Source of the DNA: Guillardia theta CCMP2712
Taxonomy: Eukaryota > Protista > Cryptophyta
Reading direction: 5' to 3'
DNA length: 64,000 nucleotides
Assembly: GCF_000315625.1 (NCBI RefSeq)
Contig: NW_005434672.1
Location: 899,374 to 963,373 of the forward strand
Shown piece by piece: positions 262 through 36,512 of this stretch. The notes under the pieces were generated by a model. It had not been told where the DNA came from. It saw only the letters and a list, made by a program, of their open reading frames with translations, and searched no databases. The position numbers were made by a program, and so were the translations under genes. Numbering within the stretch: position 1 is the stretch's first letter; the number at the start of each line of letters is the position of its first letter.

Positions 262-2727
262 ATGTGGCGTCATGCCATACTGCAGCTTTACCTGGTGCTT
301 GCCATGACTGTGAGGCAAGTTTGCAATGCACCAGTCATCACCAGTATACGTCCGAGCAACATGCCAGCAGTTGGGGGAGGTGATACGACCTTCCTTGTCA
401 TCGGGGGATCAAACTTCGGTTTCACAACGAGCAACATCATGGTTGGCATCGGCACATCCTTCTCCTCGGAAGTTTCCAATGCTGTAGACTCGCTCGTGAT
501 CTGCAAGATTCCTGCAGGAACAGGAGCAGGCCTTGATGTGTTCGTGAACGTCTCTGGTGCAGTCACCACACTGCTCAAGTCCTTCAGTTATGATCCGCCG
601 ATCGTCACCTCACTCAACCCCAACAACGTCCCAACTGCTGGCTCAACGTCGCGGGTGCTCGGGAAGAACTTTGGAGTTGCGAATGTGTCTCCGGTCATTC
701 AGATGGCAGGAGTCTCTCTTCAGTCTTCATGGACGTCCGATTCTAGCGTGCAAATCGTAGTTCCTCCAGGCGCTGGAGGAATGAAGTCACTAAGTATTGG
801 AGTTTCAAATCAGGTCTATACTGCTGTCAATGCGCTGTCATACAGTGCTCCAGCAACCAATCAGGTACAACCCCCAGTTGTCGAGACGATAGGAGAGCTT
901 GTCTCTGTTTCAGGATCCTTCTTCGGGGTGGTCGATTACACCGTATCTTCAAAAAGCGGTTTTACATATTCAGAATTCACACAATGGATGTCCGATTCAT
1001 TTATATATTGCAAAGTTGCCAGAGGGGCAGGCTGCTGTATGGATCTGTCTGTCACAGTATCTAATCAGGAGGGTGTCAAAGCAGCTGCCACTTCCTTCTA
1101 TGCCCCTGCCTTGGGAGCATTTCAGAAAGATCCGCTCTCAACAACGATCACAACATTGCTGAATCTAGATGGATCAAGCTTTGGTATGTTTGATTTTACT
1201 ATGCAGGCTCGTATTGGGCGGTCAGCTGGTGTCTCAACACGATGGAGCTCAGAGACATCCTGCGTTGTCTTGTCCTCACGGGGAGTTGGAGGAGCACTGC
1301 TAGTTGTTGCGAGTGTGGCAAGACAGTCCGGAACATCGAGCTCCGCGTTGACCTACGTCTCGCCAAAGCTCAGCGCCGTCTCTCCTGTGGTTGGGTCACC
1401 TTTGGGTGGTTTTGTATTGTCTCTGACAGGTAGTTCCTTCGGAAGTGACGACTACTCCCCTCTTGTACTAGTTGGGATGTCCACATGTCAGACTTACTTT
1501 GTATCGGACTCTAGCACGAGAGTTGTCGTCAAGAGCGGAGTGGGGGCGAATCTTGCTGTCTCCATCTCATCTCAAGGTCAAGTAGGGATATGGAACAACT
1601 TCTTCTCCTACCAAGCACCCAATGTCACTTCGATCAGTCCTGCTAACTCGCCTACCGCCGGGTCTCTTCAGATCTCGATCTTAGGGAGCAATTTTGGGTC
1701 AAGTTCTCAACCGGATCAGAACATTGTTATTGGAAAAACTTCTTGCACTCTTACTCTCTGGAAATCAGATTCATCCATGACGTGTGTCACGCCAAGAGGT
1801 ACTCGATCCGGTCTGGACGTCAGCGTGAGGAGCGGGGGGCTAGTCGGGACATTCACAGCAGGGTTCTCCTTCGACCGTCCTGTGATAGAGTCAGTCTTTC
1901 CTGGTGTAACTGCCACCGCAGGAGGGCAGAGTATAACCGTCATTGGCAAAAACTTCGGAATCTTCGGGAGCTCGCAGGTCACAGTGAAGGTGGGATACAC
2001 AACCTGCTCCTCCTCTGCTTACGGTTTGAATGAGTACATGTTGATCTGTGTTCTTGCTCCCGGAGCTGGTATAATGCTACCAGTCTATGTGGCACTGGAC
2101 GGAGGCTCCTTTACAGGGCAAGTGAACGCGTTCTCATACTCGCCTCCAACACTGCAGGCTGTAAATCCATCCATCCTCTTGCCTGCTGGTCGTCTCAAGC
2201 TCACGCTCTCGGGCCAAGGATTCGGAACCGGATCGGACAGTCAGAGCGCTGCTGTTCAGTCAACTGTCTCCCGGACCACCTTCTGGATTTCTGATTCTTC
2301 TCTTCCGTTCTTGTATGCTGCAGGAGTAGGGAGCGGTCAATCGGTGAGCGTGTCAGTGGGAGATCAAAGGCACTCGCTCAAGAATATCGCTTCGTTCTCG
2401 ATCCCTCTGCTAAGCTCCACCCAGCCTTCCAATGTGCCTTCGCTGCTTCCGACTGTGGGGATAGCAGGACAATGCTTCGTGGCGTTCGACACGAGTGGAG
2501 CCGTAAGGGTGCAGGGGCAGATGAACGGGAGAGGAAGCGCTTCTATGACTTCTCAGTGGACTTCTGATTCAAGTTTACTCTGCAAGCTCAGCTCGGGAGC
2601 CGGAGTCCTGATTTCAGTGCAAGTCACGATCTCTTCGTTCTTCAATTCCATCTCCTCGTCTCTCAGCTTCGATCTTGCCAAAGTCAAATCAGGTCTCCCT
2701 TTCCAAATCTTCCCAAGAGCGGGATGA
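262..2727 (+). CDS. N-terminal part of giant IPT/TIG-repeat surface protein (signal peptide plus about 9 IPT/TIG-like repeats); continues in the -1 frame into 2724..36512
   Basis: First ATG is at 262, followed by the hydrophobic leader MWRHAILQLYLVLAMTVRQVCNA. Repeats of about 85-90 aa carry P-x-N-x-P-x-x-G, G-x-N-F-G, W-x-S-D-S-x-x-x-C, P-x-G-x-G and F-S-Y/F-D. The last repeat is completed by the next ORF in another frame. Confidence 0.8.
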   Translation: MWRHAILQLYLVLAMTVRQVCNAPVITSIRPSNMPAVGGGDTTFLVIGGSNFGFTTSNIMVGIGTSFSSEVSNAVDSLVICKIPAGTGAGLDVFVNVSGAVTTLLKSFSYDPPIVTSLNPNNVPTAGSTSRVLGKNFGVANVSPVIQMAGVSLQSSWTSDSSVQIVVPPGAGGMKSLSIGVSNQVYTAVNALSYSAPATNQVQPPVVETIGELVSVSGSFFGVVDYTVSSKSGFTYSEFTQWMSDSFIYCKVARGAGCCMDLSVTVSNQEGVKAAATSFYAPALGAFQKDPLSTTITTLLNLDGSSFGMFDFTMQARIGRSAGVSTRWSSETSCVVLSSRGVGGALLVVASVARQSGTSSSALTYVSPKLSAVSPVVGSPLGGFVLSLTGSSFGSDDYSPLVLVGMSTCQTYFVSDSSTRVVVKSGVGANLAVSISSQGQVGIWNNFFSYQAPNVTSISPANSPTAGSLQISILGSNFGSSSQPDQNIVIGKTSCTLTLWKSDSSMTCVTPRGTRSGLDVSVRSGGLVGTFTAGFSFDRPVIESVFPGVTATAGGQSITVIGKNFGIFGSSQVTVKVGYTTCSSSAYGLNEYMLICVLAPGAGIMLPVYVALDGGSFTGQVNAFSYSPPTLQAVNPSILLPAGRLKLTLSGQGFGTGSDSQSAAVQSTVSRTTFWISDSSLPFLYAAGVGSGQSVSVSVGDQRHSLKNIASFSIPLLSSTQPSNVPSLLPTVGIAGQCFVAFDTSGAVRVQGQMNGRGSASMTSQWTSDSSLLCKLSSGAGVLISVQVTISSFFNSISSSLSFDLAKVKSGLPFQIFPRAG

Positions 2728-29700: not shown

Positions 29701-32700
29701 GCACGTTGTCAACAATCCAATTGTCCTTACGCGATAGATTTTCTAATGCAATCAATGAGAATATTTCCGTGACATTAGTTTCTGTCATTCAGAACGATCT
29801 CAACTCAAGATCGATTTTTCCTGTCACTTTCAAAGAAAATGTTTTAAGTTTCCAATTTGCCCTGACAAGATCAGGAATCTACTCATTGTCATTGGAGCTG
29901 AATGGGGATCAATTAAGTGATTGCTTCTTTTCTGTTCGAATATTACCGCAAATTCTATATCTTGGGAATTCAGTCCTTTCTGGTGTTGGGTCACTCAAAA
30001 CCTGTCTGCAAACAAGTAATTGGTTCTACATATTCCCAATCGACCGTTATGGAAACCAGGCATCCTTTCTGAACCAGCAAATCGAGTTGAATGCTACGGT
30101 AAGAGAAAAGAGCCTGTCACTTTGGTGGTCGTTTTCGAACTTGGGTCCGTACTTATCTTTCGTTTACAACCTCACAGTCCCTACAGATAGCACATCGAGC
30201 GCGACTTTGCAGATTTTTCTCATTCAAGCTCAAGTACAAGAAGTTATTGAGGTGCCTCTGCAGATATTCACGGACTGCGGGGCTTTGAGCTTGACTCAGT
30301 CCAGTCTCTCACTGCTTCCTCTTCTCATCCCAAGGGCTGGCTCATTAATCACATGGAGAGTTATACTGCTTAGCAGCAAGGGTCTTGAAATGATGGTTCC
30401 AAACTTGAATCTCAAAGCGACAATATCTGGAAATGACCAAACGTTTACACTCATGAATGTCGCTGTCACTGCATTCGCAAATGGCACATATGCTGTCGTC
30501 TTCTCTGTCACCGTAAGCGGCTCTTACTCCCTCTCCGTCCGTCTTGGCAGTCAAGATATCGGAGGAAGCCCTGCCTCCTTCGCCGTCCTTCCCGGTCCCT
30601 CGTTCCCAGCTAACACGCTGGTCTCCTTGCAAGACGGGCAGGTGGTGACGGCAGGGCTGGCTTTCTCTTTCACAGCGCAAGCTCGAGACGAGTACGGCAA
30701 CGCGCGAGGAGAAGGAGGGGATGGGGTGGAGATCGCTTTCAGACATGCCGAAGGGATGTTCCTCAACGGAAAGTCACAAGACTTGGGCTCGGGAACATAC
30801 ATAATATCAGTTCTTGTACAAAGAAGCGGCAAATATTCTGTTTATTGTAATTCTTCAAAACAATTGATTGATTTACGGATCTCAATCCAAGCAACTCCAA
30901 ACAATCCATCTCCATTGAAATCATACGTAGTTTGGACACTTGTCGAAGGAAATATGGCTTCTTGTGCTGCACCTTGCAGTGTAAATGTCTCCTACATCTT
31001 GCAAGACTCTTTCGGTAATGTTATTGATGGAAACGATGCCCCCACTATGTTTTGGCCTGGGCTATCAATACAAGCAATAATGGACCGATTTCAAATCATT
31101 CCCTATCTCGAATCCGACCTGATTTTAGCGTCAATCATACTGACGACATCAGGACAATACAGGATTGAGGCCACCATGTTGGACGGAGTCATACAAGGGG
31201 GCATACTCCAGTTGTTCGTGATTCCTTCTACAAACCCTGCAGATCTAAAATTCATTGCTGCTTTGAATGAGATTTTCACAAGGTACAATGAAGAAATATT
31301 GATCTCAGTGTCAGTTGAGGATATTTTTGGAAACTCAGTCGATAGCTATAGTCTACCTGATATCAATCGAGCTCAAGGAATCGTCTTGAAAGATTCAAGG
31401 ATGCTTTTTAACAATAGCCTAGAGATGGTCCAATGCCCGAGCACATGTATATCTGTAAGATTCAGGTTTCAATGTGACAACTGCACTTTGAACGTTCTGT
31501 TCACTCATGGGTCACAATCTACTTACCTAGCTAATCCATTGACATTGTTCGTGTCTGAGGAACCTGAGCCACAGATAGTTATTGCACAGTTCGACAATTC
31601 TTTGACTTCTATCCGTGTTGACATGTCTGGTGATACATATTTCGCTTTCCAAGAATCCTGTACAAGTTTGTTAGGGAGCACCTTCATGGACAAGCTTGGA
31701 GTGATGCCATCTTGTTTTTTGACCAGCAAACAAGAAATAAAGATTCTGCTGGGCAACAATGCCTCCCTAGTCTTTTATGACCAACTCTACTTCTTGCCAG
31801 GATCCTTGAAGACAAGAGCCGGTACGCCGATGGGAGAGAAATCGGCTCTCGTCATTCCTCCAGCCCAACTTGAAGCTTTCATTGTTGAGATTGACTGCGC
31901 TGACACGCTGGGGCCAGGCTCTGATCTCTTCCTCAATGTGAGGTTCAGACAAGGGCAGACATCGAGGGGATTGAGCTTAGACTGGAGCTTGAAAGCAGGT
32001 CCAGGTACAGACTCACTCCGAAAGTTGCTGATGGAATCCAAGAATCTGCAGAGTCTCAACATCTCAGGAAGTCTGCTGTTGTATGGGTACACATATGAGT
32101 TCTCCTTGCTTGCTCGCATTTGGACAGGGCAGACTTGCATAACGTCGAAGCAAGTCAACCTGATCAGGTCCTTCATTCCAAGTTTGTCTATCACAGGTGG
32201 TCCTGTGATTTCCATACCCTTGTACTCAGACATTGTAATCAAGGCAGTGATCCACTTGCCTCCTGCAGTGCCTGATCGCGTTGGAATAATGTGGAGTCAG
32301 GTAGACGGGGATTTACTGAATTCTCTTCAAAATGGCTATTTTGGAGCAGAGCTTTTATTGAAACAGTCAGAGTTGAGTCCTGGAGCAACGCTCTTGTTGA
32401 GAGTGATGGTTTACAGCAAAGAGGGGAGCAAATCGTCTATTCAAAATGTTTCGCAGCTTGTCACGTTATCTTTGAGTCCATCTCCTTTGTCCAATCGTCT
32501 CATGAGATCCGTTATGTTCGTTAGAGCTACAGAAGACTTTTATCTTTACACAGACCGATTCTTGCGAATATTAGCGACAGATAAACCAATATACATCTGG
32601 AGCTGCACGTCTCCAACACATGATACATGCTTTCAGGAATCCAGCGGCATAGCAGAAAAGTTGCAGTCTGACTCTGCTCCGTTCCTATTCGTCCCACAAA

Positions 32701-35700
32701 ATTCTCTCTTGCCCGGCAACTACACGTTCAATGTTCAAATCATCATTGAATCAGGACTGAGAAAAGCAAACTTAGTGTATGACGTAGTTGTGAAGGGGAG
32801 TCCCTTGTTCGGCCTTAACTTGTCCTCTTCAATCGTAATATTCCCTGATTCATCGGGCTGGCTATCCGTACTGGGTAAGTTGAACGCTACATCCACATCA
32901 AACTCAGGAAATACAATTCTTGAACTGCAAATTGAATCAGAGCAAATCTCGCAAAGCAAAGTGGACAATGGATTATTGCTTTCTTGGAGACTAGAGCCCT
33001 TTCCTGGTGCATTTCTCAGTCGAGGTATCTTGTCAGTCAGATTTTCAGCTGTCGCAGGGAACCTTGAAGGTTTTGCTAGGGTTGATTTCATTCTCAGACC
33101 CCCTATGGGAGGTAATCTTCTAGTACAAGAAATCGTCTACGTGTATAGTGTCGTTTCAATCTACCAAGTTAACTTCGTAGGCTTCCAGGCTCAGTCAGAG
33201 GACTACCCACTTGTGTACTCCCTTTATCAAAGCATCAACAGCTCAGCAAATGGGCTGCTGTATGTGGACTCAGGGATCGATTCAAACTTTCAGATTTATC
33301 ATTCCGAGACCATCTTGGGAGCTGTGAGCATAAGTGGCTTTGTGTCGTCAGTACAGGGAGAGAGCGTCGGGTATCAGCATGTGATCGGATCTTCCCACGA
33401 CAAGACGATCGATGTATCGCAATCTCTCGCGCAGCTTCAGGCTGCTTATGGAGTGCTGTCATCGTTGATGCAGGAAGTTTCTAGAACGGCAAATTCGAAG
33501 GCGCTCAAGCAAATCGCTTTCATATCTCTTCAAGCAGGAGAAAAGTACTCGCAACTGAAGAATGCTCGAGGAGGGCCTGAATCTTCGTTGCAGCTTGATG
33601 CCTTAGACTCACCCAAGATGTCATCGGCTTTAAAACGCTCAATCAGTGAGAGTGGAAGCAGCCTTAGTCCAGACTTGTTGGCAGAGCTGCAGGGAGTTTC
33701 AGAAGATGTCACCGATGTCTTTGCTGAAGCCATTCTTTCAATGTTTTCTTGGCAGAGCTTCGGCATTGGTTTGACCGATGCTATCTCAAGGCTGGTCAAC
33801 TTGTTGAAACGGGTAGAAGACTCTTCATCCAGCCATGACCATCCCATCTCTCAAGTCTTGTCAAGAAGAGACCAAGACTTTCATCTCACACAACTAAGCG
33901 CATCTTCCGCTTCTCAGCCCTCGTCTGAGCTCACGATCCTTGCAGCAGACGCTCTGTTACAATCTTGGAACTATTCGACCCTGTCGAATGATGATGTTGG
34001 AAGCTTCAGCCTCTTATATGGCAAGATCTTGACTAGTTTAATGGGGAGCACAGATGAGACCTTGAAACTCTCCATTGCAAATAGTTTCCTCACTGCTTGC
34101 AAACACTTTGTGCTCATGGTTGACTCAGAAGTACCATGGTGGGTTTACACAAGCTTTGTCGATGATGTTGGAAAGCTATGCGTTATTGTACAACAGAGCA
34201 GTAGCCTATCTAGTGTGATGTTACAGATATTGGATTATTCAAATCAGATCATAAGAGGCTCTTTGAAGATGATCGTCGATGGCGAAGAATCTAGACTCAT
34301 AGAAACCAGCTTTGCAAGCGTGTGGACCAAAAAGGTTCTAGCAAACGAATTGTTCTCTCAACATTCACGTCTTTGCATGCTCAGTAATGGATGCATTCAA
34401 ACGGCCCTGAACGAAGCATTTCTTCCTGAGCCAGCAATGGACGTAACCAGTGCTGGCACGTTGAGCATACAAATCATTCTGTGGAAAACGTTGCCAAATG
34501 CTTTCACCGCAGTGTCAACCAAAGCAATCGCACTCGGCCCCATCCTACAACTGAACGCCACAACATCCCGCTTGGAATTGAACTACATGTCACATTACCG
34601 CAAGTTGAGAGACGCCTGGTCTGTCACTTTCGACATCCAGAGCCTCACGTCAGTCCCTCGTTGTGCCTGGATCAGTGACATGGCTACACTCGACACTGTC
34701 GGTCTGGTTGCTGACTGCGCGACAGCTGGGAAGCTGACGTGTTGGAGCTATGCTAGAGGGAGCAGACTAGCTGTCATCTACGTGGGGCTCAGCACAAACA
34801 GCGGAAACCAGCAGTACAGGAACATCAGAACAGCAAGCTTTCAAGGGGCATACTCCCAGCAGAGCGAGGTTGCTTCAACGATCTCATTGCTGATTGTGAT
34901 CACCACCTCGGTTATCTCTTTCGTTCACTTCCTGCGGGTGGCAATGTTTGTACGCAAAGTTTTGAATCGATACCTGGGTTTCAAAACGACTGAGTTTCGC
35001 AAACCAGGTGACACATTGACATCTTCGGTAAATGAATCTGTGGAAAATTCGTTCTCTCTCAGACGGCTGTTCTTGCATCATCCCGTTACAACGTTGCTTT
35101 TCTTTGCGTTTCAGCCATTCCCAGTCTACCTGCATAGAATTTCAGTGTTGTCTGCCTCGATCAATTTTCTCTTAGCAATGAACTTTACTATGCAAGCAAT
35201 GAGAGTCTTCGTGGAAAGTGATTGGGCAGCGCAAGCCACCGTTATGAGCATCTTAGTCGTTCCTGTCTATCTCCTTCTCCTCTTTCCAATCTTTGCTCAA
35301 CAAGAGTTCGAACATGTAATGTTTCGAAAGAAAGGTCGAGTTGTTCCTGAGGATGTGCCAGACTCTCGAGAAGCAGAAGCATCTGCCACCGAAGCGCAAA
35401 CAGCAAGGAAATCAGGTCGTCATCATCGAAGGAGCCGAAAAGCCAAAGGGAGAAGGTCACGAAGAATTGACGAAGAGCTAGAGTCGGCGATGGACGTGAC
35501 CTCCCAGACCTCCGACATCATGTCTACTATGTCATCACAGAGTCCTCAGGGTCCTACCAGAGGGTCACACGACGACAGCCAACGGCATCCGTTCAGCCCA
35601 TCAACTCTCCGCGTCTCGATGGTCAACTGGTCTGTCAGTTCTCCCAAGACTTCTAGTCTTGTCAGTACAGGAAGTAAGCGAATGAGCTCGAGCATCTCGA

Positions 35701-36512
35701 GAACTGGAAGAGAAGGCCTCGGAAAGAAATCGCAAGCTTTTGAGACAGAGATCGAAGAGGAGGAGGAGGACTTGGAAGGGATCGCCTTCAGAGTGCACGA
35801 GTCGGGAACTACTTTCCCTGTAGTCGGACAACACTTTGGGCTGCCGTACGAAGAGATAGTTCTTCCTCCGGCTCCTCCCAGCACCCCTAGGTTGCATGAC
35901 GCGCAGCATCAGGATCATGATGGCAATGACCAAGAGCTCTTCACGCAAAACCTGCTATCTCGTCTAGAATATTTGACTTCTTCCCCGCAGAGTGCAGCAC
36001 GAGGCTCCCGTATCCCCGAGGACATGTGGCATGCTGGCTCTCCTGTGCAGAGTGACGTCACGTTACCGCACCAGCTGAGCTTTGCGGAGAGAGAGGAGAG
36101 GCCGACCGCGCAAGACACTTCACAGGCCATCCCCCTAGACATCTCCGAGCTGCAGACCGGGATCCCAGTGACCCATCAGGAATCCAAGGGGGAGACGGCA
36201 TCGAGAGCCCTTACCTGGACGAGCGTCATGTTCGTTGCTGCTCGGTGGGTGCTGTTGAACCCTTTGCTCTTCTTTCTGGCTGCTGTGGATGCTTCAGGCG
36301 CTTTCGTACTCCGAACGAGCCCGAGCGTCAACGTCATCTTGTTTAACGTCCTCCTGTGGTACCTTGTTGACCAGCTGAGCTTCAGCTTCGATCCGTCGTA
36401 CAACCATGCGTGGGAGAAGGCCATCGCCCTCAGCATCGTTTTGTGGGTCATCCTGCATGCCGTGCTGCTTATTGGAGTCTGGGCGATGCGTGCTCGGATT
36501 ATGAGATCGTAG
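2724..36512 (+). CDS. Giant polycystin-1/REJ-like membrane receptor: IPT/TIG repeats (to ~23760), filamin-type Ig repeats (~23790-31550), REJ/GAIN-GPS-like region (~31560-34780), about 5 TM helices (~34880-36490)
   Basis: Uninterrupted 11,262-codon ORF. IPT-like WxSDS..C and SYD/SFD repeats; filamin-like RDxYGN and T-x-S-G-x-Y motifs; GPS-like CAW...C...TC...LAV before TM1. The segment LFLHHPVTTLLFF...HRISVLSASINFLLAMN resembles polycystin-1 TM2, and further hydrophobic helices run to the C-terminus. Confidence 0.85.
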   Translation: MTRVSLVGLNFAGADYTPSLRIGQTACWSNVWNSDTNLVCGVPAGLVAERVIVTILNTVGSSADALSFDLQTVTSSSRYNLRSDVVNSLTLLGASFGYWQPNTFQVSVGFSPCASTVWKSSSSLTCLVRQGVGLAADVQVLVESSVQIQRKFFSYESPTISNVKGANLATNSIAALSIYGSGFSQVDYTIQARTGRTRAQATTWFSQTSAVCLAQAQIRTSLQLLTTLQVSLGTLSNVISFDAIQVTSVNSVNLSQVPTILLFLSSNYLYNTFKDMTLKTAVGSTSSPYTVWSTSSQVTCKGSSTASASQRITLSLSNPLLSSLSSAFSFNPINLLQSQNRLESITTYFYAVGLAYEDHSLALRVGVTSAQQTAWRSYTAMQVKVSSSVGREVRLIASASSVLATSSSSNEFTLPLASSTSPSNSPPAGVSLIAFLGTSYGSTSYSQSVRVGPSESVRTIWTSASSIASIPSFSMSNAMNVVITSGLQAGTAFRFFSFDAISISSVHVQNIPNSGNRLVSFSGSSYGSSSYTLRPSLSFSVLQTASWTSDTAIVCKVIAGVGNKLPFAVAQGSAYTNTGTISDVISFDSPQLSGSSKQNMPQIAPSLVTIFSSVGFGSADYSSILVLLNGKQVLSSLWTSDSSITCQLAPGEGEGLNFAVQFQNEISFVTQMFTFDAPAVSAALRSNLASNRHFSILGYNFGVVDLSIKVCVGTLSQKTIWQSVTSLVAIAEQRARTSVSLIVTTWQREGTLSSSVSYAVPVLSTLYAGNGPVVTLNPLVLFESSTSSTPLSESMRIGFTACERTLWISGTQIAGKVSSGVSKSAGIVVTYCLSSNSLSHAYSYDLSAQVDRVNIPVAGAMIVSFPLLTFQPLCYTPTVRMVSALQSTRWSSTSSISCSVRMLPGRTLSVQVTIGRSIVTVTEATSFDTSAMSSISTTNSFSRGQTLYIYSKPLSLNLESTLALRIGPSKVLETLWLSSTSLSGRAAFAYARSQSLSLSVASLQSSTSQVFSYDSVQLSSAIRGNIFSTGVIAINFRALAIEVFSLTASVRVASTVSSRSMWTSDSAVQALVSSGVGGSLSQMLTVVLQVSSLSQLLSYDRPTLASRPANSPTTGNVDLQLSGAGLGNFDACPVAQVERFVCRASMWKSDSSMVCRVNEGAGAGLDISVKVKEQVGTLSSAVSFDTGIILAVSQANFPSSGNSIVSLIGVNLGAFSMTSYARVGGTACQYTVFQSQSQIWCKVAAGVDQNMQTLVSVAFQQSQALAQTLSYDIGSASSQGLVSSTTGNNVVETVGAYLGTYDSSVRSRVSQTEMQATRWVSDTCLQGICPAGEGRGLRLVISIGARHSTMSESISFASVVFVDKGLNFVVSVTSYLAAGHSFAPFDTTSQVRLQHTASVPTHWFSDSSLSCLLPYTTGGGKKMIMTIHGNTETSRDFISFDLPVFSVTQVVNLRATRSNFFVTGKGFPMYDLSVSASISGSSGEVTIWTSATTVHGIFSGQTLASGSISLTMSGIKATVSEAFSMDVLKISSIARLNYGPQMFGDMLIGTSLSRTTFSPATRIGGTSMPVSKWISSSVLTCRATPMERRSLSVSFTTNGAATSITESLSFEQSFLTSTLQQNLDVRGNSYLVIFGAFSEHSMKTRVASSACRSTVWQSDSVVNCNFVIQTPRSMASIISAALSSIHSITNSLSYDSFVLDSYLSSQNNVINLNSISVPFGLIAQATVRLRMGFSNAESSVWRSATSLEIKSVIENGRSLALCLTSSSLYTSTNTHTFDLYVSFQSVISSSNFPILAATKIIGKGFALSDKSIGSRISSTSSASTNWISDSSVTSTYTSYAFRTFSTVITMSAVTNTLSQALTMDAPIIDGIALSSTNIVKQKSIQLLSLAYMDDVRSASVRVGSTSSLSTAWNSSSYVFCKIAAGAGHSKGIYLSIHSLVSSASSAVSYDTLAISSGLNQTRSTANTRGVLLSQLLPPDSLQVVSSYSASTRIGRTSCESTGWISTSEVRVQAHAHGRQSMSLSITCGRGASTVSELLTYSAVTVSSVQSVNAGSRSTFLIASLSRVSSSAAGRVGSTGCEISTWLSVTSVSCICARGRSQLGTQAVALTISQATGSVSGSVSFDTQQITGAERGNRYMGMVRSVIVGAVGAVGGAASVSASLRQGSTACERSLWISGSSLAGRTASGQAGSMRVVASVAGQPASTSRAASYDVPMTSEALRTNVGGQGGAKSVQVWGQGYGPSASASVGRSSCERSGWLSDTAIQGTTSGEGYGGTRGVIVSSGRQVGTRSASVSYDAERLLSLIFSGNSFFPGQGNLMLPLKTFIRFSSSSNFNKVSLGIRTGFTVSSRSMWTSDSAVQALVSSGVGGSLSQMLTVVLQVSSLSQLLSYDRPTLASRPANSPTTGNVDLQLSGAGLGNFDACPVAQVERFVCRASMWKSDSSMVCRVNEGAGAGLDISVKVKEQVGTLSQVFSYDGPAVFRAIPSFSDTVGNSIIFVEGLNFGWSFAKIEVWVGSWACTNVQFIRQDLLSCTTPAGFGRDLPIRVRTGGQETFTARLFSYLPPTLSGVLSNYGPSSGGGIVTYFGKYFGYENCSPQAYFGGTICATSLWTSDSAVTCFLNGGYGSLSGLSLNVQNQTTTSLIFAAGYIPPTVSTGSRQNQPATGAVLISIAGRDMSIASYTPASRIIGTSCPQTLWRSDTSIVSMSARSGMMSSNSVLVASIGAIRCSLTESVSYSKPDSYILPGAPGNTIAKVASSVLFTSSSMDCSLKARMGATSSQMTLWSSYSSLSTKFQRSSGASNSLIVTMGIQSGTASAVLSYDMLSLTASSQYNLVEYRWAILFVKPQVFKFEPLLDISSAIRAGVTNSQATSWVSSCSISCKFATLSSHSKQVILSVSQTSQSLTEIISYDKCKASTLSRTNFLADPSDLIFTISGLNFGAFDSSVSMSIGNSRNQFSEWSSETNVFSKVAPFTVHTMSLICSIDGLVGSVSQIFSSDVPLVSRFSNNFPSIISPSVALKLSSPRLRISGTSSQCTAWISQCELVCNIMPSISRTAHLSMSYGVIPRSLTSAFSFSAPKLSSALASNSISSKDGATSLTVIGIFNLQFDNTVSIRVLKTVSRSTLWISSTSTSCRTSSSTGHTANTMLTASLQVGSTTEIFSYDVSILSSSATPNLQSREFRLQVWLARHDFPSYSEIIRVSTTSCESTAWLSATTLAGVVAATTTQTLKLVLTTLVTPSTITQSFSHDSLVVNVLISNNFPSTGSGRIVILGTGLGPVQTSLAARPSGTASEAVGWISDSTMKAKVSAGVNDRSSWLACTVMGRPGSVSSLHSYDLPSLSSSSRTNFAASGGALISATGSGFGVHGVSPMIAVGDTYASSNVWVSETAMRGRLAPGVGAELPMRALVGCCTTGTSTQVFSFDKPTVSSIQPAYAATTGLALLYLAGRNFGTFDSTVSISVGDTKCTESTYVSNLVLSCLVSPGVGASQTVRATVGGQVAESPVLFSYMGPTVLGIGRQNGPATGGVLVTLQGRNFGSFESSAKGRAGTAAERTIWTSDTQLSFGVTGGSGPQITIVLTVFDQAVSNLVGFSYLNSRISAVTMSNIGSSVSFSVAVFGEFSSSDMSGKVILGSTVCRSTSWSSSTSMSCYSGSNPGSSLSISITNGFSFVAVTSSVVSYDIPPLVTFKFGDAQSSVFDVLGKGFGNCIMTQRSRVGSSISIETQWLSDTSLKVLQILQVFRSKSFALSMSSQCSSRTSCLSYENGMVSALSQQSNIPLSAKIDLSVAGLNLGISSGSIWVRIGESGSERTIWISSSQVLAKTVEGTKRSQRLTCSMSAIPFSSLNTVSYDLVLSRPSDAERNTGGRSAAVQTLSGVNGYNSRSEKARFGSTSAERTVWKSCTNINIKTSASTGKSNTIAITTDAAVNTFSNAFSFDTSPVISSCNTQTATIQVLSLFTSGTFITSKSRIGETASSNTQWKSSTIIYSKIAAGAGHSKGIYLSIHSLVSSASSAVSYDTLAISSGLNQTRSTANTRGVLLSQLLPPDSLQVVSSYSASTRIGRTSCESTGWISTSEVRVQAHAHGRQSMSLSITCGRGASTVSELLTYSAVTVSSVQSVNAGSRSTSLIASLSRVSSSAAGRVGSTGCEISTWLSVTSVSCICARGRSQLGTQAVALTISQATGSVSGSVSFDTQQITGAERGNRYMGMVRSVIVRAVGAVGGAASVSASLRQGSTACERSLWISGSSLAGRTASGQAGSMRVVASVAGQPASTSLAASYDVPMTSEALRTNVGGQGGAKSVQVWGQGYGPSASASVGRSSCERSGWLSDTAIQGTTSGEGYGGTRGVIVSSGRQVGTRSEGLSYDHFALQNASGQNLALESRSALLFGLSKYQLGRFSASARLGQSSMPGSLWMSTTSLFVRIVASDQLRTLSLIISSSTSISTSTEAMSYDGLTMSSVQVQNCIVHDKISILSFAGASGQSLSTRAGRTSFEATTWTSFTSIQLKSVQVTSTTRMTVSIAIKTGSLTQALSFNAIEASTLYISNQPSTGSGRIVILGTGLGPVQTSLAARPSGTASEAVGWISDSTMKAKVSAGVNDRSSWLACTVMGRPGSVSSLHSYDLPSLSSSSRTNFAASGGALISATGSGFGVHGVSPMIAVGDTYASSNVWVSETAMRGRLAPGVGAELPMRALVGCCTTGTSTQVFSFDKPTVSSIQPAYAATTGLALLYLAGRNFGTFDSTVSISVGDTKCTESTYVSNLVLSCLVSPGVGASQTVRATVGGQVAESPVLFSYMGPTVLGIGRQNGPATGGVLVTLQGRNFGSFESSAKGRAGTAAERTIWTSDTQVVLQPASALFPLSVISMTVARSIKTDARIFSTDSAFASLFSPSNSPVLQRTILTVIGQNLGTSDYSLTVHFSSSAASFSSWLSDTSLVSLPSVGNGQNLTVNMVKDNQIFGLKLSFSFDSPYLYQLPSKSNFPASGLGRTELIGINFCAFDTSLKVRILRTQVQLSVWTSDSSITCSSIPPGISFGSMTTETVFDKYPSSGIVQYDQPSASLASTSNLALRSAIPQRLAIFGSALSVFDPSLQVRVSQSVSANSRWISDTALTCQVTTSHSYSLKTVLTVGVLYGTTTQLLSYDCVQLSSISSLNVIPRTTMNISTMNLIRQTISPSSLSLRVGDTTCEKSQWGSDLSLTCKLAFSSVSFSQKLSLTVAISLSSCTNMLSYNALAISSCTQTNIVKQTQIVVSTSSNHLGIHTFASRLKSSSASETIWNSLSSLTLRFSPGVSASLPVRITQLSLVGTISNILSFDGVNLEYIKNRDTPDSTDSLLYGLLSSTSDFTLSFRIGGSSCETTQWISQSVVHCSAAAGSKGNHSVTLTSFAASGTVTAAFTFGPPSMFCPVNQTLTSNVVVIDGRRFGERDFSPKMRVGASGCSYTRWISDRQLICKDAAGIGNQLAMVVTAIALKSTNTNCLSYKHPVVQQLLLPNGPSVFSRPKILGSYLGPFSVSAGMRLGHSSTEISIWMSDSALSCYATGSSASRLTAVVTAQSLLTSLTQGFTYDFAVFQSSYINGSRNSPTRGGVKSALLIDSISSSDLSSSVRLGYSVIQSSEWLSLSSITVRPTRGLGQKLKLTLTISNRIGTCSDFFSYDASNLTNSSSFELSIENKTSLQLTGIGFGFFGISPRLRIGYSLTENSMWTSDSTVSSLALPGVGGDFSVNYNDLFDSGRIRFSYSHPIALNWTSLSFPSIQLQGLNLGRWSDYTLQTRLSFTSSEQTMWFSTSSTFVKLPNAQGGSLRIVITVAKQLGSSSSSVTFDAPLKILTQNSPLLSKQFLMSGLGMYSNSIASRIGSSGSISTTWISDSTIYVRTVSSSQSSLFLMLTTSVLVRTSTRLFSFDLPLLMLSMANIPITATWVQSTTSNNSHFSSSARARFGQTAAESTRWLSYTSIISRVATGYKGTLTHSLTVQSRLCSLTNAVSYDSMTVELLSLSNITTNLCSKSSTYIVPFAHPRYIGTASLRFGFTSAEYTVWSFETAIYTKYPSGHSRSLNLILTASDVSTVTSLFSFDNPTILEVTGVEGNLFDGAQILAFGTNFGIYDASINAVVEISSDSTNKVDHSMWTSDTSILVSLLPVYGEPFMYFQSYGYRTPSFSIDFPFVPNVISANPSVHDTQGDLNFTEVIGTKFGIRDYTLRVTLGDTIARNTIWMSYSSLLCTVSAGVGEFHNYFVTIFGNIGVGSSFYSSYRTPLPIDIRSSHDTDVSLVNGRFFGYGADYTVRASISWSSCPSSFWISDSSLSLKVSTAQGFGLDLIVTVDQQLGTGVNKFSFQPPGVSSVSQEDLICYNVSTQTIFGTYFATFDASLSLRIGGSHQRSTVWAAETSITLKPTGVTGSSLNVMITVSQNIGSMSNMYSSCLSQISSVFPVNLGSSRSVAVSVFGRFYGRYSPTAVASVGITTAASTTWTSETSLTCISYKADRGMQHMLKMTMNILPTTITNALSWDGPFISSFNPNNSPTSGTITTTMFGSNFGSMDTSLTIKIGQNVCSSSRWKSDSQMICQIPQGVQLGQSVYLQTANSTSIATVSQIFSYDKPLIYPNSLQIVGNLYKSNSVTGNPEANGKDLIEFSGANLGRSDLNKISIFYGPSQNKSKYQCSVTDKFSYVNESRVRCFTDPQGYSRNLSFMVYVGLYSFGGTDLYSYPPIIFDGTLRIDRKSSDLILDSTQGGQAFSFEGRNFGNVWEKMTVRFFSYYASSAKFQTVIQYANSTSEKLNGLLGPGVGFSVIFEIEIQNVTVRGKDTFSFPLPVIENGSLCTANCGSNCRFASTLDSEKVSFRGQNFGNFPTLISIFYGRDVPSQGWSRRYPCVVNFSNDTFISCFASPGTGKDLYLEVNIAGQVVRSHDLVSYPPPYIDKMYPMLDGGSIPLNYVLRDALGNEVLMIQGGNFGPEISLVSIAFGRVGLNFWTEARLIYEKSNVSFITFSPGIGSGAWLTIRLEVGGQSVYSKTYFSYPFIQNISGWQVEASQSKVVGMQSNTIYQAGMNQRFYILTASNNGNLLTLGGAEFQATISGPAYITSNSVDGQDGTYFIDFLATRSGEYVARVFQLPWRKDVGNSPYTILISSEMIPNASMTVASFKNSVLRCGRNESLLLILRDRYGNTLENQWSQYHTEVSFLSNIIVHQDSDVDVLSLHLFGTRSGPFYIEIFLNSTSILQNPVRNVLQPSSASASATQTSLVQATMIAGSIVRIASIIAKDAFGNIASQGGDSIKIRLPIAEHLYDYQVYDQLNGTYHVYAMVKLQGNFSLQLYVNDESAGSPSFILKVLSSSPDAQFSKCSGVGLTAATAGIVSYFHIVPKDRYSNAISFGSNDLFRIYIQNLLTRTFFSPSDLYLANASFQIGVFLTQAGHYYLNVVSSGQIFCNPPVLLRVTPQSYDLNAFAVSKSISGGILTSSSLQFEIFPRDKYGNTANLRGFLNISVQPVVNTTQAISSNSIKVTWNPKVAGVYTFNIRTVSGELLFKGPISSNVVLQAGPASAQQSEIARIASNRQVGNTIDATIIAAADTGILLNTGGLSFTVFVQNNNNKQSVASLPVLDFANGTYAVVFSVTVSGSYSLSVRLGSQDIGGSPASFAVLPGPSFPANTLVSLQDGQVVTAGLAFSFTAQARDEYGNARGEGGDGVEIAFRHASGGSVQVSGLDLQTGEYSFSALLTASGTYTLQGTLLSSDIFTAQPRSISVSPASPTGSTAVAEGLGLYHAVAGEEAVIRLYVRDEYGNQVGALPSGYIDTVSLVIKRGSGEGLNIGVRKSAFTSGVEVRYTATQSGLYTVFVLTQSIMVQSSQVEIQANVFDPNSVDLSFAATYSSGDVFNVTFIILDFFTNGATIGILRIVMACQNGRSIYGFENVSNGTKVRLTATKKAQDCQIALFSEAEILLRTKYITFVAGKVDSQASSVNFVSESVLQAGNIGQISIYPRDQFYNPLSNFQITAQECHGKPLVITAIQKTSSFSAIVQYTATKSGNYSLCVTINDVSLADKPSTQYISSIPIATTIRLEFLQGNQNVSQDVAGKATILSVQAFDMYMNIFDHYSSSQNSILSSEVYLKDSLVQIMDFIGFSNSSYLFQYMMTRSGAYSIQIKLESLILVVQRQVTPSEFFFSNILIDSSYIAANETTSIRLIPKDSYGNNVTLSQSLSAVILSSDGQELSTTLFSQADRMVSARISITRSADYFVMLSYPSFESKKLKFTILPGVVSAQNTFGQGVGLVGAIVQYQTSFLVYFRDRFGNKLLNSADIQLFVKIQDAANVKQISIEQVDADKKCVRYLPTSVATLAVFVFIRTTSDTPIMSSPFNVQVFDKPDTISATKTYVIPQTERRNVKDKNTFIIISVTNQGAGMITGGFSFNCLLASPTNKQSVASLPVLDFANGTYAVVFSVTVSGSYSLSVRLGSQDIGGSPASFAVLPGPSFPANTLVSLQDGQVVTAGLAFSFTAQARDEYGNARGEGGDGVEIAFRHASGGSVQVSGLDLQTGEYSFSALLTASGTYTLQGTLLSSDIFTAQPRSISVSPASPTGSTAVAEGLGLYHAVAGEEAVIRLYVRDEYGNQVGALPSGYIDTVSLVIKRGSGEGLNIGVRKSAFTSGVEVRYTATQSGLFLLEVVMNGMQIFTTPKILQVDSGAVSVGLSSASGFGLIRAIAGVLATFDILSRDVYGNNFTRGGLLWSMILQNKQTAMQSRTIAQDLNNGRYQIKYNVTVSGSYIMSVIRDDVHISGSPSQVQIVASNAEPTKTYLTSYQSISTAGVILKFCLVSTDKYGNLVNFQDSVGFTIGDSKQEYSTIAMPFSDSNCNEIIFTLTQSGKYPLHFSLDQARFQSVVMYVYPGSTNKAYLLSSLTSLLRIQAGDTTTMLLLLQDRYGNNVTYPNQIAVMLNSSLISPYPVPIADDLVLVNFSITSSGSFAFSVKIDNIVVMPLAQYITVLPNYPVAEYSSCLNSVSLQTAGTLSTIQLSLRDRFSNAINENISVTLVSVIQNDLNSRSIFPVTFKENVLSFQFALTRSGIYSLSLELNGDQLSDCFFSVRILPQILYLGNSVLSGVGSLKTCLQTSNWFYIFPIDRYGNQASFLNQQIELNATVREKSLSLWWSFSNLGPYLSFVYNLTVPTDSTSSATLQIFLIQAQVQEVIEVPLQIFTDCGALSLTQSSLSLLPLLIPRAGSLITWRVILLSSKGLEMMVPNLNLKATISGNDQTFTLMNVAVTAFANGTYAVVFSVTVSGSYSLSVRLGSQDIGGSPASFAVLPGPSFPANTLVSLQDGQVVTAGLAFSFTAQARDEYGNARGEGGDGVEIAFRHAEGMFLNGKSQDLGSGTYIISVLVQRSGKYSVYCNSSKQLIDLRISIQATPNNPSPLKSYVVWTLVEGNMASCAAPCSVNVSYILQDSFGNVIDGNDAPTMFWPGLSIQAIMDRFQIIPYLESDLILASIILTTSGQYRIEATMLDGVIQGGILQLFVIPSTNPADLKFIAALNEIFTRYNEEILISVSVEDIFGNSVDSYSLPDINRAQGIVLKDSRMLFNNSLEMVQCPSTCISVRFRFQCDNCTLNVLFTHGSQSTYLANPLTLFVSEEPEPQIVIAQFDNSLTSIRVDMSGDTYFAFQESCTSLLGSTFMDKLGVMPSCFLTSKQEIKILLGNNASLVFYDQLYFLPGSLKTRAGTPMGEKSALVIPPAQLEAFIVEIDCADTLGPGSDLFLNVRFRQGQTSRGLSLDWSLKAGPGTDSLRKLLMESKNLQSLNISGSLLLYGYTYEFSLLARIWTGQTCITSKQVNLIRSFIPSLSITGGPVISIPLYSDIVIKAVIHLPPAVPDRVGIMWSQVDGDLLNSLQNGYFGAELLLKQSELSPGATLLLRVMVYSKEGSKSSIQNVSQLVTLSLSPSPLSNRLMRSVMFVRATEDFYLYTDRFLRILATDKPIYIWSCTSPTHDTCFQESSGIAEKLQSDSAPFLFVPQNSLLPGNYTFNVQIIIESGLRKANLVYDVVVKGSPLFGLNLSSSIVIFPDSSGWLSVLGKLNATSTSNSGNTILELQIESEQISQSKVDNGLLLSWRLEPFPGAFLSRGILSVRFSAVAGNLEGFARVDFILRPPMGGNLLVQEIVYVYSVVSIYQVNFVGFQAQSEDYPLVYSLYQSINSSANGLLYVDSGIDSNFQIYHSETILGAVSISGFVSSVQGESVGYQHVIGSSHDKTIDVSQSLAQLQAAYGVLSSLMQEVSRTANSKALKQIAFISLQAGEKYSQLKNARGGPESSLQLDALDSPKMSSALKRSISESGSSLSPDLLAELQGVSEDVTDVFAEAILSMFSWQSFGIGLTDAISRLVNLLKRVEDSSSSHDHPISQVLSRRDQDFHLTQLSASSASQPSSELTILAADALLQSWNYSTLSNDDVGSFSLLYGKILTSLMGSTDETLKLSIANSFLTACKHFVLMVDSEVPWWVYTSFVDDVGKLCVIVQQSSSLSSVMLQILDYSNQIIRGSLKMIVDGEESRLIETSFASVWTKKVLANELFSQHSRLCMLSNGCIQTALNEAFLPEPAMDVTSAGTLSIQIILWKTLPNAFTAVSTKAIALGPILQLNATTSRLELNYMSHYRKLRDAWSVTFDIQSLTSVPRCAWISDMATLDTVGLVADCATAGKLTCWSYARGSRLAVIYVGLSTNSGNQQYRNIRTASFQGAYSQQSEVASTISLLIVITTSVISFVHFLRVAMFVRKVLNRYLGFKTTEFRKPGDTLTSSVNESVENSFSLRRLFLHHPVTTLLFFAFQPFPVYLHRISVLSASINFLLAMNFTMQAMRVFVESDWAAQATVMSILVVPVYLLLLFPIFAQQEFEHVMFRKKGRVVPEDVPDSREAEASATEAQTARKSGRHHRRSRKAKGRRSRRIDEELESAMDVTSQTSDIMSTMSSQSPQGPTRGSHDDSQRHPFSPSTLRVSMVNWSVSSPKTSSLVSTGSKRMSSSISRTGREGLGKKSQAFETEIEEEEEDLEGIAFRVHESGTTFPVVGQHFGLPYEEIVLPPAPPSTPRLHDAQHQDHDGNDQELFTQNLLSRLEYLTSSPQSAARGSRIPEDMWHAGSPVQSDVTLPHQLSFAEREERPTAQDTSQAIPLDISELQTGIPVTHQESKGETASRALTWTSVMFVAARWVLLNPLLFFLAAVDASGAFVLRTSPSVNVILFNVLLWYLVDQLSFSFDPSYNHAWEKAIALSIVLWVILHAVLLIGVWAMRARIMRS
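5886..6259 (+). repeat. Internal cassette A, copy 1 (374 bp)
   Basis: Matches 9762..10135 with no difference noticed; offset 3876 nt (1292 codons). Confidence 0.9.
8482..9595 (+). repeat. Internal cassette B, copy 1 (1114 bp)
   Basis: Near-identical to 14686..15799 (at least 4 substitutions seen); offset 6204 nt. Confidence 0.9.
9762..10135 (+). repeat. Internal cassette A, copy 2
   Basis: Matches 5886..6259. Confidence 0.9.
12516..13409 (+). repeat. Internal cassette C, copy 1 (894 bp)
   Basis: Near-identical to 16371..17264 (at least 1 silent substitution); offset 3855 nt. Confidence 0.9.
14686..15799 (+). repeat. Internal cassette B, copy 2
   Basis: Near-identical to 8482..9595. Confidence 0.9.
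16371..17264 (+). repeat. Internal cassette C, copy 2
   Basis: Near-identical to 12516..13409. Confidence 0.9.
25475..26195 (+). repeat. Internal cassette D (filamin region), copy 1 (721 bp)
   Basis: Near-identical to 27944..28664 (at least 3 silent substitutions); offset 2469 nt. Confidence 0.9.
27944..28664 (+). repeat. Internal cassette D, copy 2
   Basis: Near-identical to 25475..26195. Confidence 0.9.
30477..30749 (+). repeat. Internal cassette D, partial copy 3 (273 bp)
   Basis: Matches 25515..25787 and 27984..28256; shares the gatggggtggag variant with copy 2. Confidence 0.85.

What the first reader, a model, noticed from the sequence alone, without database searches (positions are those of the whole stretch)
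262..36512. About 12,000-aa polycystin-1-like surface receptor with an IPT + filamin stalk
Seen: a signal peptide, roughly 7,800 aa of IPT/TIG-like repeats, roughly 2,600 aa of filamin-like Ig repeats, a REJ/GAIN-like region, about 5 TM helices and a long disordered cytoplasmic loop. Known: polycystin-1 family proteins couple REJ-GAIN to a TM region, but human PKD1 is only about a third of this size. Inference: on the order of 100 Ig-fold modules could form a filament a few hundred nm long, suggesting a mechanosensory or adhesive antenna on the cell or flagellum.
Basis: partly seen in the sequence, partly recalled or inferred. Interest (0 to 1): 0.75.

Follow-up and report, generated by a model that had tools for sequence, protein, structure and literature searches.

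The report
Giant Ig-repeat REJ membrane protein
The alga Guillardia theta encodes a roughly 12,000-residue membrane protein with about 112 antibody-like modules, a sperm-receptor-type REJ module and 6-7 membrane helices; it resembles but is not a true polycystin-1, and public annotation holds only its last tenth.

Summary
Window 262-36512 codes for one giant protein of about 12,083 aa. It has:
- a signal-peptide-like start;
- 90 IPT/TIG repeats (7,832 aa);
- at least 22 filamin-type Ig repeats (about 2,400 aa);
- a true but divergent REJ module (31854-33368);
- a helix-then-strand region next to the membrane;
- 6-7 hydrophobic helices split by a roughly 310-aa disordered, basic loop.

Two corrections apply. 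The reading frame breaks once at 2722-2727, and a TIG unit runs straight across the break, so a 1-base indel is likely. GAIN/GPS is not shown: Pfam, custom profiles and hhalign all fail, and both AlphaFold models have pLDDT 37.

PLAT, the polycystin channel domain and the 11-TM layout are absent, so this is a REJ-family receptor-like protein, not a polycystin-1 member.

The C-terminal 1,650 aa are 63% identical to a Hanusia phi transcript protein that ends at the same residue. The only G. theta database protein found for this locus covers the last 1,135 aa.

The gene is not unique. The genome holds many TIG-array genes, including two more open frames above 10,000 codons and paralogues with REJ plus canonical GPS.

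Function (long surface tether for adhesion or sensing) is inferred.

The parts
262..330 (+). Start codon and signal-peptide-like N-terminus (23 aa, MWRH...VCNA|PV)
   Evidence: Sequence read directly. An in-frame stop lies at 250-252. No signal-peptide predictor was available.
319..2715 (+). IPT/TIG repeats 1-9 (frame 1)
   Evidence: Pfam TIG E 9.7e-60, 6 stretches; own HMM finds 9 units at p1 20-818.
2716..2727 (+). Frame break: frame 1 ends at TGA 2725-2727 and frame 0 continues from ATG 2724. It lies at a GGG run (GCGGGATGACC).
   Evidence: With X at the break, one TIG unit aligns without a gap across it (HMM 10-95, 77.0 bits, against 67.2 bits for the downstream piece alone). The two pieces were searched apart in all database tools.
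2724..23813 (+). IPT/TIG repeats 10-90 (81 units). The TIG array as a whole is 27% Ser+Thr; median pairwise identity between units is 23%.
   Evidence: Pfam TIG E 1.2e-82 and 5.4e-63; own HMM; composition.
23778..30899 (+). 22 filamin-type Ig repeats (Filamin / Ig_GEX2_N / Invasin_D3 cross-hits)
   Evidence: Pfam Filamin E 2.5e-29 and 2.7e-56, Ig_GEX2_N 2e-27. Own HMM finds 22 units. Scanned repeat by repeat, Filamin and GEX2_N score about equally.
30900..31853 (+). Linker with weak Ig-like/pre-REJ sequence. The start of the C-terminal module aligns to the region before REJ in homologues, which is partly K319L-like PKD.
   Evidence: No Pfam hit in a scan of window:30897-31859. One weak Filamin stretch, E 0.007, in a separate scan, mostly upstream of this part at about nt 30648-30851. 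Homologues P0004/P0005 align here over their K319L-like PKD region.
31854..33368 (+). REJ module (divergent)
   Evidence: Pfam REJ does not hit at E<=10. phmmer against 1.8 billion proteins finds REJ-bearing proteins, P0003 at E 2.6e-31. A custom HMM of 10 Pfam-verified REJ stretches scores 64.8 bits, E 3.4e-22, over residues 99-603; 200 shuffles reach at most 3.4 bits. Atlas features point to REJ clusters at 0.91.
33369..34868 (+). Juxtamembrane domain in the position of a GAIN domain: about 12 helices then about 10 strands, with C-x-W...G...C spacing but no HL|T/S. Homology to GAIN/GPS is not shown.
   Evidence: Secondary structure comes from a low-confidence AF2 model (pLDDT 37). Motif comparison. 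Negative results: Pfam, hhalign probability 0.2-1.5%, custom GPS/GAIN HMMs. Weak lead: Atlas GPS cluster at 0.90 with 154 shared features.
34869..34937 (+). TM1
   Evidence: Kyte-Doolittle 2.19; conserved in Hanusia and P0003. A basic stretch follows, which suggests the N-terminus is outside.
35067..35297 (+). Cluster of 2-3 hydrophobic helices
   Evidence: Kyte-Doolittle 1.37-2.57; helices in the AF2 model; conserved in both relatives.
35298..36218 (+). Disordered loop of about 310 aa, S/E/R/T/P-rich, with a basic cluster (RHHRRSRKAKGRRSRR) and short motifs conserved in Hanusia
   Evidence: Composition; mostly coil with two short helices, pLDDT mostly 26-38, in the model; alignment.
36219..36491 (+). 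Cluster of 3 hydrophobic helices at the C-terminus
   Evidence: Kyte-Doolittle 1.59-2.74; the last segments also align to P0003.
36510..36512 (+). Stop codon; true C-terminus
   Evidence: The Hanusia phi protein ends at the homologous residue (...RVRIMRI against ...RARIMRS*).

Best explanation
This is one gene for a giant (about 12,083 aa), probably heavily glycosylated membrane protein of the cryptophyte Guillardia theta.

Shown:
- A signal-peptide-like start.
- 90 IPT/TIG units followed by at least 22 filamin-type Ig units. Together these make a linear array of about 112 Ig-fold modules.
- A divergent REJ module.
- A juxtamembrane helix-plus-strand domain without a GPS cleavage motif.
- 6-7 membrane helices, interrupted by a roughly 310-aa disordered basic loop carrying short conserved motifs.

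Inferred:
- The Ig array projects from the cell or flagellar surface as a tether up to a few hundred nm long.
- The membrane-proximal REJ and juxtamembrane domains couple the tether to the membrane module. The loop of that module is the likely docking site for cytoplasmic partners.
- The protein therefore works like an adhesion/sensing receptor of the REJ family (sea-urchin REJ, PKDREJ, Ectocarpus Esi0130_0068).
- It probably stays uncleaved, because HL|T/S is absent.
- It has no channel half of its own.

The single frame break at 2722-2727 is most simply a 1-base indel at a GGG run, either a sequencing error or a very recent mutation.
For: - Open frames and the break.
- A TIG unit is continuous across the break.
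- TIG and Filamin by Pfam.
- Repeat counts.
- REJ homology by exhaustive HMMER, by Pfam on the hits, and by an independent custom profile with shuffle control.
- Hanusia phi transcript-derived orthologue, 63% identical over the whole 1,650-aa C-terminal module and ending at the same residue.
- A third collinear relative, P0003.
- Hydrophobic segments and loop composition.
- G. theta paralogues carrying REJ plus canonical GPS, with TIG arrays 11-14 kb away on the same contigs and strand. This suggests, but does not prove, that TIG-REJ-(GPS)-TM is a family layout in this genome.
- A published algal REJ+GPS+6/7-TM gamete gene: PMC4700764.
Against:
- The frame break could be real.
- Near-identical internal patches (at least 99% over 276-1,114 bp) mean the exact repeat number could be affected by assembly.
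- Both AlphaFold models are unusable (pLDDT 37), so the fold of the juxtamembrane domain and the TM topology are unknown.
- Nothing here locates the protein or shows binding or signalling.
Confidence: 0.6

Rival explanations
1. A true polycystin-1 family member: REJ-GAIN-multi-TM mechanosensor that pairs with a PKD2/TRPP channel, perhaps on the flagellum.
For: - REJ homology.
- A domain in the GAIN position with helix-then-strand order and a weak GPS lead from the protein language model.
- Precedent for giant extracellular filaments tethered through polycystin-like TM domains in Chlamydomonas MST3 (PMC11015965).
Against: - No GPS, PLAT or PKD_channel hit even at E<=10.
- Custom GPS/GAIN profiles and hhalign are negative.
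- The first loop is too short for PLAT, and there are 6-7 rather than 11 TM segments.
- The gene ends at 36512 as in Hanusia.
- The next gene is an unrelated Ion_trans/cNMP channel starting about 4 kb downstream.
Confidence: 0.1
2. A structural surface-coat component: an anchored fibril of the periplast surface or of flagellar hairs, with no signalling role.
For: - Extreme length, and 27% Ser+Thr in the TIG array, which suggests dense O-glycosylation.
- A large family of TIG-array genes in the genome, including two more open frames above 10,000 codons that lack REJ and TM.
Against: - A simple anchor needs one TM helix. Here a multi-pass module and a long loop with conserved motifs are kept at 63% identity between genera.
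- REJ modules are otherwise found in receptors.
Confidence: 0.2
3. A broken gene or an assembly artefact: the frameshift is real and the locus is a decaying pseudogene, or the array length is inflated by misassembled repeats.
For: - A frame break at 2722-2727.
- Internal patches at least 99% identical.
- The only G. theta database protein found for the locus is 1,135 aa.
Against: - 11,262 codons remain open after the break, which is incompatible with any age of decay.
- The break sits at a homopolymer and leaves the domain register intact.
- Repeats are mostly about 23% identical to one another, so most of the array is unique sequence that assembles unambiguously.
- There are no N bases in the window.
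- The orthologue is transcribed in Hanusia.
Confidence: 0.1

Closest known systems
Polycystin-1 / PKDREJ / sea-urchin REJ proteins (REJ family)
   Same: A large Ig-fold ectodomain followed by a REJ module just outside a multi-pass membrane region. REJ homology is shown transitively.
   Different: No detectable GPS, no PLAT, no C-terminal channel-like 6-TM/TOP domain, and 6-7 rather than 11 TM segments. The ectodomain is built from TIG and filamin units instead of PKD repeats, LRR or C-type lectin domains. By my own knowledge it is about three times the size of human PC1.
Ectocarpus Esi0130_0068 (male-gamete REJ + GPS + 6/7-TM protein; PMC4700764)
   Same: An algal protein with an extracellular REJ module followed by 6-7 predicted TM helices. 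It matches the layout of the C-terminal 1,650 aa here.
   Different: It is 1,427 aa with a GPS motif and no Ig array. I made no direct sequence comparison because the protein was not retrieved.
Guillardia theta paralogues on contigs C37 and C1, and large filamin-REJ proteins of other protists and algae (P0015 from a pedinophyte, 6,545 aa; P0016; P0021/P0031; P0032)
   Same: Filamin-type arrays followed by REJ. The G. theta paralogues have REJ followed by GPS and a TM helix, with TIG arrays 11-14 kb away on the same contig and strand.
   Different: The G. theta paralogues and P0033 keep a canonical GPS (C..W..W..GC..C.C.HLT.F); P0024 shows REJ but no GPS. The window protein and its two cryptophyte relatives do not have one. 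None of the others reaches this size or carries 90 TIG units.
Fibrocystin (PKHD1) / PKHD1L1
   Same: A very long ectodomain dominated by IPT/TIG units on a membrane anchor (own knowledge for PKHD1; TIG is shown here).
   Different: Neither the G8 nor the PbH1 region of fibrocystin (own knowledge) gave a Pfam hit in the chunks scanned at E<=0.01. This protein is multi-pass rather than single-pass and has a REJ module.
Chlamydomonas MST3 (mastigoneme axis protein with a PKD2-like TM domain; PMC11015965)
   Same: A giant extracellular filament-forming protein anchored in the ciliary membrane through its own multi-pass C-terminal domain. It is a functional analogy for a surface or flagellar tether.
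   Different: MST3 has a polyproline-helix axis and a recognisable PKD2-like pore domain. Here there is an Ig array and no channel-domain similarity. No homology was tested or claimed.
Adhesion GPCRs
   Same: A long adhesive ectodomain, a juxtamembrane domain at the GAIN position, and possibly seven hydrophobic segments.
   Different: No GPS and no 7tm_2 hit. The long loop falls after the third or fourth helix, unlike GPCR ICL3. Topology is unresolved.

Membership tests
Polycystin-1 family (PC1, PKD1L1-3, PKDREJ, suREJ3) | REJ domain in the ectodomain | tested here: met
   Pfam REJ itself is silent at E<=10. Exhaustive phmmer hits are REJ proteins. An independent REJ profile gives 64.8 bits, E 3.4e-22, against at most 3.4 bits for shuffles.
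Polycystin-1 family (PC1, PKD1L1-3, PKDREJ, suREJ3) | GPS motif (C..W..W..GC..C.C.HL|T/S) at the end of a GAIN domain, just before TM1 | tested here: not met
   No Pfam GPS at E<=10. Custom GPS/GAIN HMMs find nothing at the expected place. hhalign probability is 0.2-1.5%. The sequence at that position reads RCAWISD...GLVADC...LTCWSYARGSRLAV, with no HL|T/S.
Polycystin-1 family (PC1, PKD1L1-3, PKDREJ, suREJ3) | GAIN fold (helical subdomain A plus beta-sandwich subdomain B) | tested here: inconclusive
   The AF2 model with a 3-sequence alignment has pLDDT 37. The order of elements (about 12 helices, about 10 strands, then TM1) is compatible, but the model is unfit for fold search. No further homologues were found to deepen the alignment.
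Polycystin-1 family (PC1, PKD1L1-3, PKDREJ, suREJ3) | PLAT/LH2 domain in the first cytoplasmic loop | tested here: not met
   No Pfam hit. Only about 45-60 residues separate TM1 from the next hydrophobic segment.
Polycystin-1 family (PC1, PKD1L1-3, PKDREJ, suREJ3) | 11 TM helices with a C-terminal 6-TM polycystin channel-like domain (PKD_channel/TOP) | tested here: not met
   6-7 hydrophobic segments and no PKD_channel hit. The protein ends at 36512 as in Hanusia.
IPT/TIG domain (PF01833) | Match to the family profile above the curated threshold | tested here: met
   199-272 bits per chunk against a cut-off of 20.9; 90 units by iterated HMM.
Filamin/ABP280 repeat (PF00630) | Match to the family profile above the curated threshold | tested here: met
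   102 and 189 bits against a cut-off of 26.9. There are 22 units by own HMM. Of the 10 units scanned singly, 6 hit Filamin, only 4 of them at or above the curated cut-off.
GEX2 (plant gamete-attachment protein) | Specific match to the GEX2 N-terminal Ig-like domain (PF23616) rather than to generic filamin-type Ig | tested here: inconclusive
   The whole-chunk score of 95.8 bits exceeds the cut-off of 27. Repeat by repeat, GEX2_N (21-27 bits) scores about the same as or below Filamin on the same residues, so this is a generic filamin-type Ig signal.
Adhesion GPCR (class B2) | 7tm_2 seven-helix domain directly after GAIN/GPS | tested here: not met
   No 7tm hit at E<=10; GPS is absent.

The most novel reading that the evidence does not exclude
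Cryptophytes have a lineage-specific class of giant tether receptors. An Ig-module filament of about 0.4-0.5 um (90 TIG plus at least 22 filamin units) is joined through a REJ module to a new, non-cleaving juxtamembrane domain and a new 6-7-helix membrane module. Both the juxtamembrane domain and the membrane module have no detectable relatives outside cryptophytes. The protein would act as a surface or flagellar mechanosensory or gamete-adhesion antenna, independent of any polycystin channel half.
Probability: 0.2. Interest if true: 0.7.

Novelty: new variant of a known kind. Interest (0 to 1): 0.45.

Why it matters
At about 12,083 aa this would, to my knowledge, rank among the larger predicted eukaryotic proteins. 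It would also be one of the longest predicted single-chain Ig-module arrays on a membrane anchor.

It shows that REJ modules in protists are mounted on very different stalks and membrane modules than in animals. This bears on how the polycystin/REJ receptor family was assembled.

It also exposes an annotation gap. The only database protein found for this locus is its last 1,135 residues. The genome holds at least two more TIG-array open frames above 10,000 codons.

For cryptophyte biology it gives a concrete candidate for surface adhesion, gamete recognition or flagellar sensing. This can be tested by localisation and knock-down.

Tried and rejected
1. Pfam on the C-terminal 1,650 aa at E<=10 gave nothing relevant. 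phmmer against PDB sequences gave only noise.
2. I ran two AlphaFold2 jobs, one on the juxtamembrane domain (33357-34949) and one on the TM region (34800-36509), each with 3-sequence alignments. Both had mean pLDDT 37. I therefore ran no fold search, since matches would be meaningless.
3. I tried to deepen the alignment with a profile word search and an exhaustive HMMER search. Only two relatives share the post-REJ part.
4. hhalign and custom HMMs built from six Pfam-verified GPS/GAIN regions were not significant. With a permissive setting the alignment was collinear (C-x-W on C-x-W-W, TM on TM), but at 1.5% probability.
5. An intron at the frame break was rejected. The only GT..AG candidates of the right phase are about 35 nt, and removing one would delete strand A of the TIG unit. 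A direct join keeps the HMM alignment gap-free.
6. A specific GEX2 relationship was rejected as a generic filamin-type Ig signal.
7. Continuation of the gene into downstream exons was rejected. Hanusia ends at the same residue, and the next coding region is an Ion_trans/cNMP channel.
8. I looked for a second genomic copy of the junction and found none.
9. A search for database proteins covering the N-terminal 821 aa found none from G. theta or Hanusia.
11. Literature searches found no paper on this protein.
Full report
**Source and setting.** Earlier notes of this scan name the genome as Guillardia theta. This fits an assembly of 87.1 Mb in 669 contigs. It also fits the closest relative of the protein being from Hanusia phi, a cryptophyte alga. 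The window is contig C2:899374-963373.

**Observation.**
- The window holds an open frame of 11,262 codons (2724-36512). It is preceded in another frame by an open stretch from 253 to 2727, with an ATG at 262.
- The N-terminus MWRHAILQLYLVLAMTVRQVCNA|PV has the shape of a signal peptide. I read this from the sequence; no predictor was available.
- Pfam finds IPT/TIG in every chunk up to about nt 23,800 (E 1e-60 to 1e-82). It finds Filamin, with Ig_GEX2_N and Invasin_D3 cross-hits, from there to about 30,900.
- I built HMMs from the clearest units and iterated them on the protein itself. This gave 90 contiguous TIG units (7,832 aa) and 22 filamin-type units (2,374 aa).
- TIG units are old and diverged (median pairwise identity 23%). 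The TIG array is 27% Ser+Thr.

**The frame break.**
- Frame 1 stops at TGA 2725-2727, and frame 0 is open from 2568 onwards.
- I searched the two pieces apart in all tools. Only in my own script did I read across the break, with X at the break.
- Read that way, one TIG unit aligns gap-free across it (HMM positions 10-95, 77.0 bits, against 67.2 bits for the downstream piece alone). The spacing to the previous unit is regular.
- No residues are missing, so an intron is excluded. The break lies in GCGGGATGACC, so a one-base indel at the GGG run is the simplest reading.
- Whether it is a sequencing error or a real, very recent mutation cannot be told here. The 11,262 open codons after it exclude an old pseudogene.
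- No second copy of the junction exists in the assembly.

**The C-terminal 1,650 aa (31560-36509).**
- Pfam is silent here even at E<=10, and PDB sequences give nothing.
- The word search found one relative, a Hanusia phi transcriptome protein of 1,793 aa. It is 63% identical over the full length and ends at the homologous residue. So the stop at 36510-36512 is the true end, and the module is transcribed and conserved in a sister genus.
- The exhaustive HMMER search added two proteins. P0002 is 100% identical to the window over the stretch compared and, from its length and alignment, corresponds to the last 1,135 residues of the ORF; it is held in NCBI and UniRef. P0003 is a collinear relative of 1,828 aa (E 2.6e-31).
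- It also gave 18 weaker hits. Of the 13 I scanned with Pfam, 11 carry REJ, and four of these have GPS 270-410 residues further on.
- A profile I built from ten Pfam-verified REJ stretches, leaving out the cryptophyte orthologues, hits residues 99-603 of the module (nt 31854-33368). It scores 64.8 bits, E 3.4e-22, against at most 3.4 bits for 200 shuffles.
- REJ homology is therefore established.

**GAIN/GPS.**
- The stretch between REJ and TM1 (33369-34868) sits where GAIN sits in REJ-GPS proteins, including G. theta's own paralogues.
- In a low-confidence model it shows about 12 helices followed by about 10 strands.
- Its end reads RCAWISD...GLVADC...LTCWSYARGSRLAV. This recalls the cysteine and tryptophan spacing of GPS but lacks HL|T/S.
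- All statistical tests fail: Pfam, hhalign at 0.2-1.5% probability, and custom GPS and GAIN HMMs.
- The protein-language-model search put a GPS cluster first, but with scores in the range that chance also reaches.
- I rate the GPS motif as absent and the GAIN fold as undecided. If the fold is GAIN-like, the protein is predicted not to self-cleave.

**Membrane region.**
- Hydropathy gives TM1 (34869-34937), a cluster of two or three helices (35067-35297), a loop of about 310 aa, and three more helices (36219-36491). All are conserved in Hanusia and in part in P0003.
- The loop is rich in S, E, R, T and P and carries a basic cluster and conserved short motifs. In the model it is mostly coil, with two short helices.
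- Basic residues after TM1 and at the start of the loop suggest both are cytoplasmic. An even/odd count consistent with this could not be fixed, so the topology is open.
- There is no PLAT, PKD_channel or 7tm hit.

**What it is.**
- It is a REJ-family receptor-like membrane protein on an exceptionally long Ig-module stalk. It is not a polycystin-1 family member, because four of five defining features fail or are undecided.
- It works most likely as a surface tether for adhesion or sensing. The arithmetic of roughly 112 Ig modules at about 4 nm each (own knowledge) gives up to 0.4-0.5 um if extended.
- Published parallels are the Ectocarpus male-gamete REJ+GPS+6/7-TM protein (PMC4700764) and, by analogy only, Chlamydomonas MST3. 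MST3 anchors the mastigoneme through its own polycystin-like membrane domain (PMC11015965).
- Function, location and partners are inferences.

**Family context.**
- The gene is not alone. A 500-aa piece of the TIG array matches 121 places in the genome.
- These include two further open frames of 10,988 and 10,646 codons on contig C25. Each has at least 56 TIG units and no REJ or TM inside the frame.
- Weak REJ-part paralogues on C37 and C1 carry Pfam REJ plus canonical GPS followed by a TM helix. TIG arrays lie 11-14 kb away on the same contig and strand.
- Elsewhere, filamin-array-then-REJ proteins of 2,400-7,000 aa occur in a pedinophyte alga and in metagenomes.
- So the parts and their order are known. 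The scale, the TIG-plus-filamin stalk, the loss of GPS and the cryptophyte-only membrane module are the new aspects.

**Limits.**
- Both structure predictions failed for lack of homologues, so I ran no fold search.
- I found no protein evidence for the N-terminal 10,000 residues.
- Near-identical internal patches leave some doubt about the exact repeat count.

Noticed in passing
window 5886-6259/9762-10135; 8482-9595/14686-15799; 12516-13409/16371-17264; 25472-26195/27940-28664; 25512-25787/27981-28256/30474-30749: In-frame patches of 276-1,114 bp, 98.9-100% identical, are embedded in repeats that are otherwise about 23% identical at the protein level. Several lie in the locally GC-richer stretches (0.54-0.56). 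This looks like recent intragenic gene conversion or duplication, or else an assembly effect.
   Followed up: partly
G000:C25:450313-483276 (-) and G000:C25:125462-157399 (+): Two more open frames of 10,988 and 10,646 codons, each with at least 56 TIG units by this window's HMM. Neither has a REJ, filamin or strong TM segment inside the frame. G. theta thus has a family of giant TIG-array genes; many other arrays of 1,000-5,000 codons appear on C199, C4, C36, C91, C95 and C54.
   Followed up: partly
G000:C37:611659-614997 (-) and G000:C1:101207-106999 (-) (loci L006, L007): Paralogues with Pfam REJ followed by a canonical GPS (CECFHLTDF / CECFHLTEF) and a TM helix. F5/8 type C domains follow downstream, and TIG arrays lie 11-14 kb away at higher coordinates on the same contig and strand. 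They are probably the conventional members of the family to which the window gene belongs.
   Followed up: partly
window 40498-43591 (+): The next gene downstream is built of several exons. It has an Ion_trans segment with an S4-like LRLLRLLKLFRLYRIKR helix (40823-41287) and a cyclic-nucleotide-binding domain (42317-43591), so it is a CNG/HCN-type channel. It is separate from the giant gene.
   Followed up: partly
window 44351-50065 (+) and 51771-53144 (+): A 1,904-aa open frame with a weak AAA_16 (STAND-like NTPase) match and C-terminal WD40 repeats, followed by a 457-aa WD40 protein.
   Followed up: no
window 262-36512: This 36-kb coding region has no intron at all, in a genome that earlier notes of this scan describe as having extreme intron/micro-exon arrays elsewhere.
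   Followed up: no
window 33105-36509: The only G. theta database protein found for this locus (P0002, 1,135 aa; held in NCBI and UniRef) starts at an internal Met of the giant frame. More than 90% of the protein is missing from that model.
   Followed up: partly
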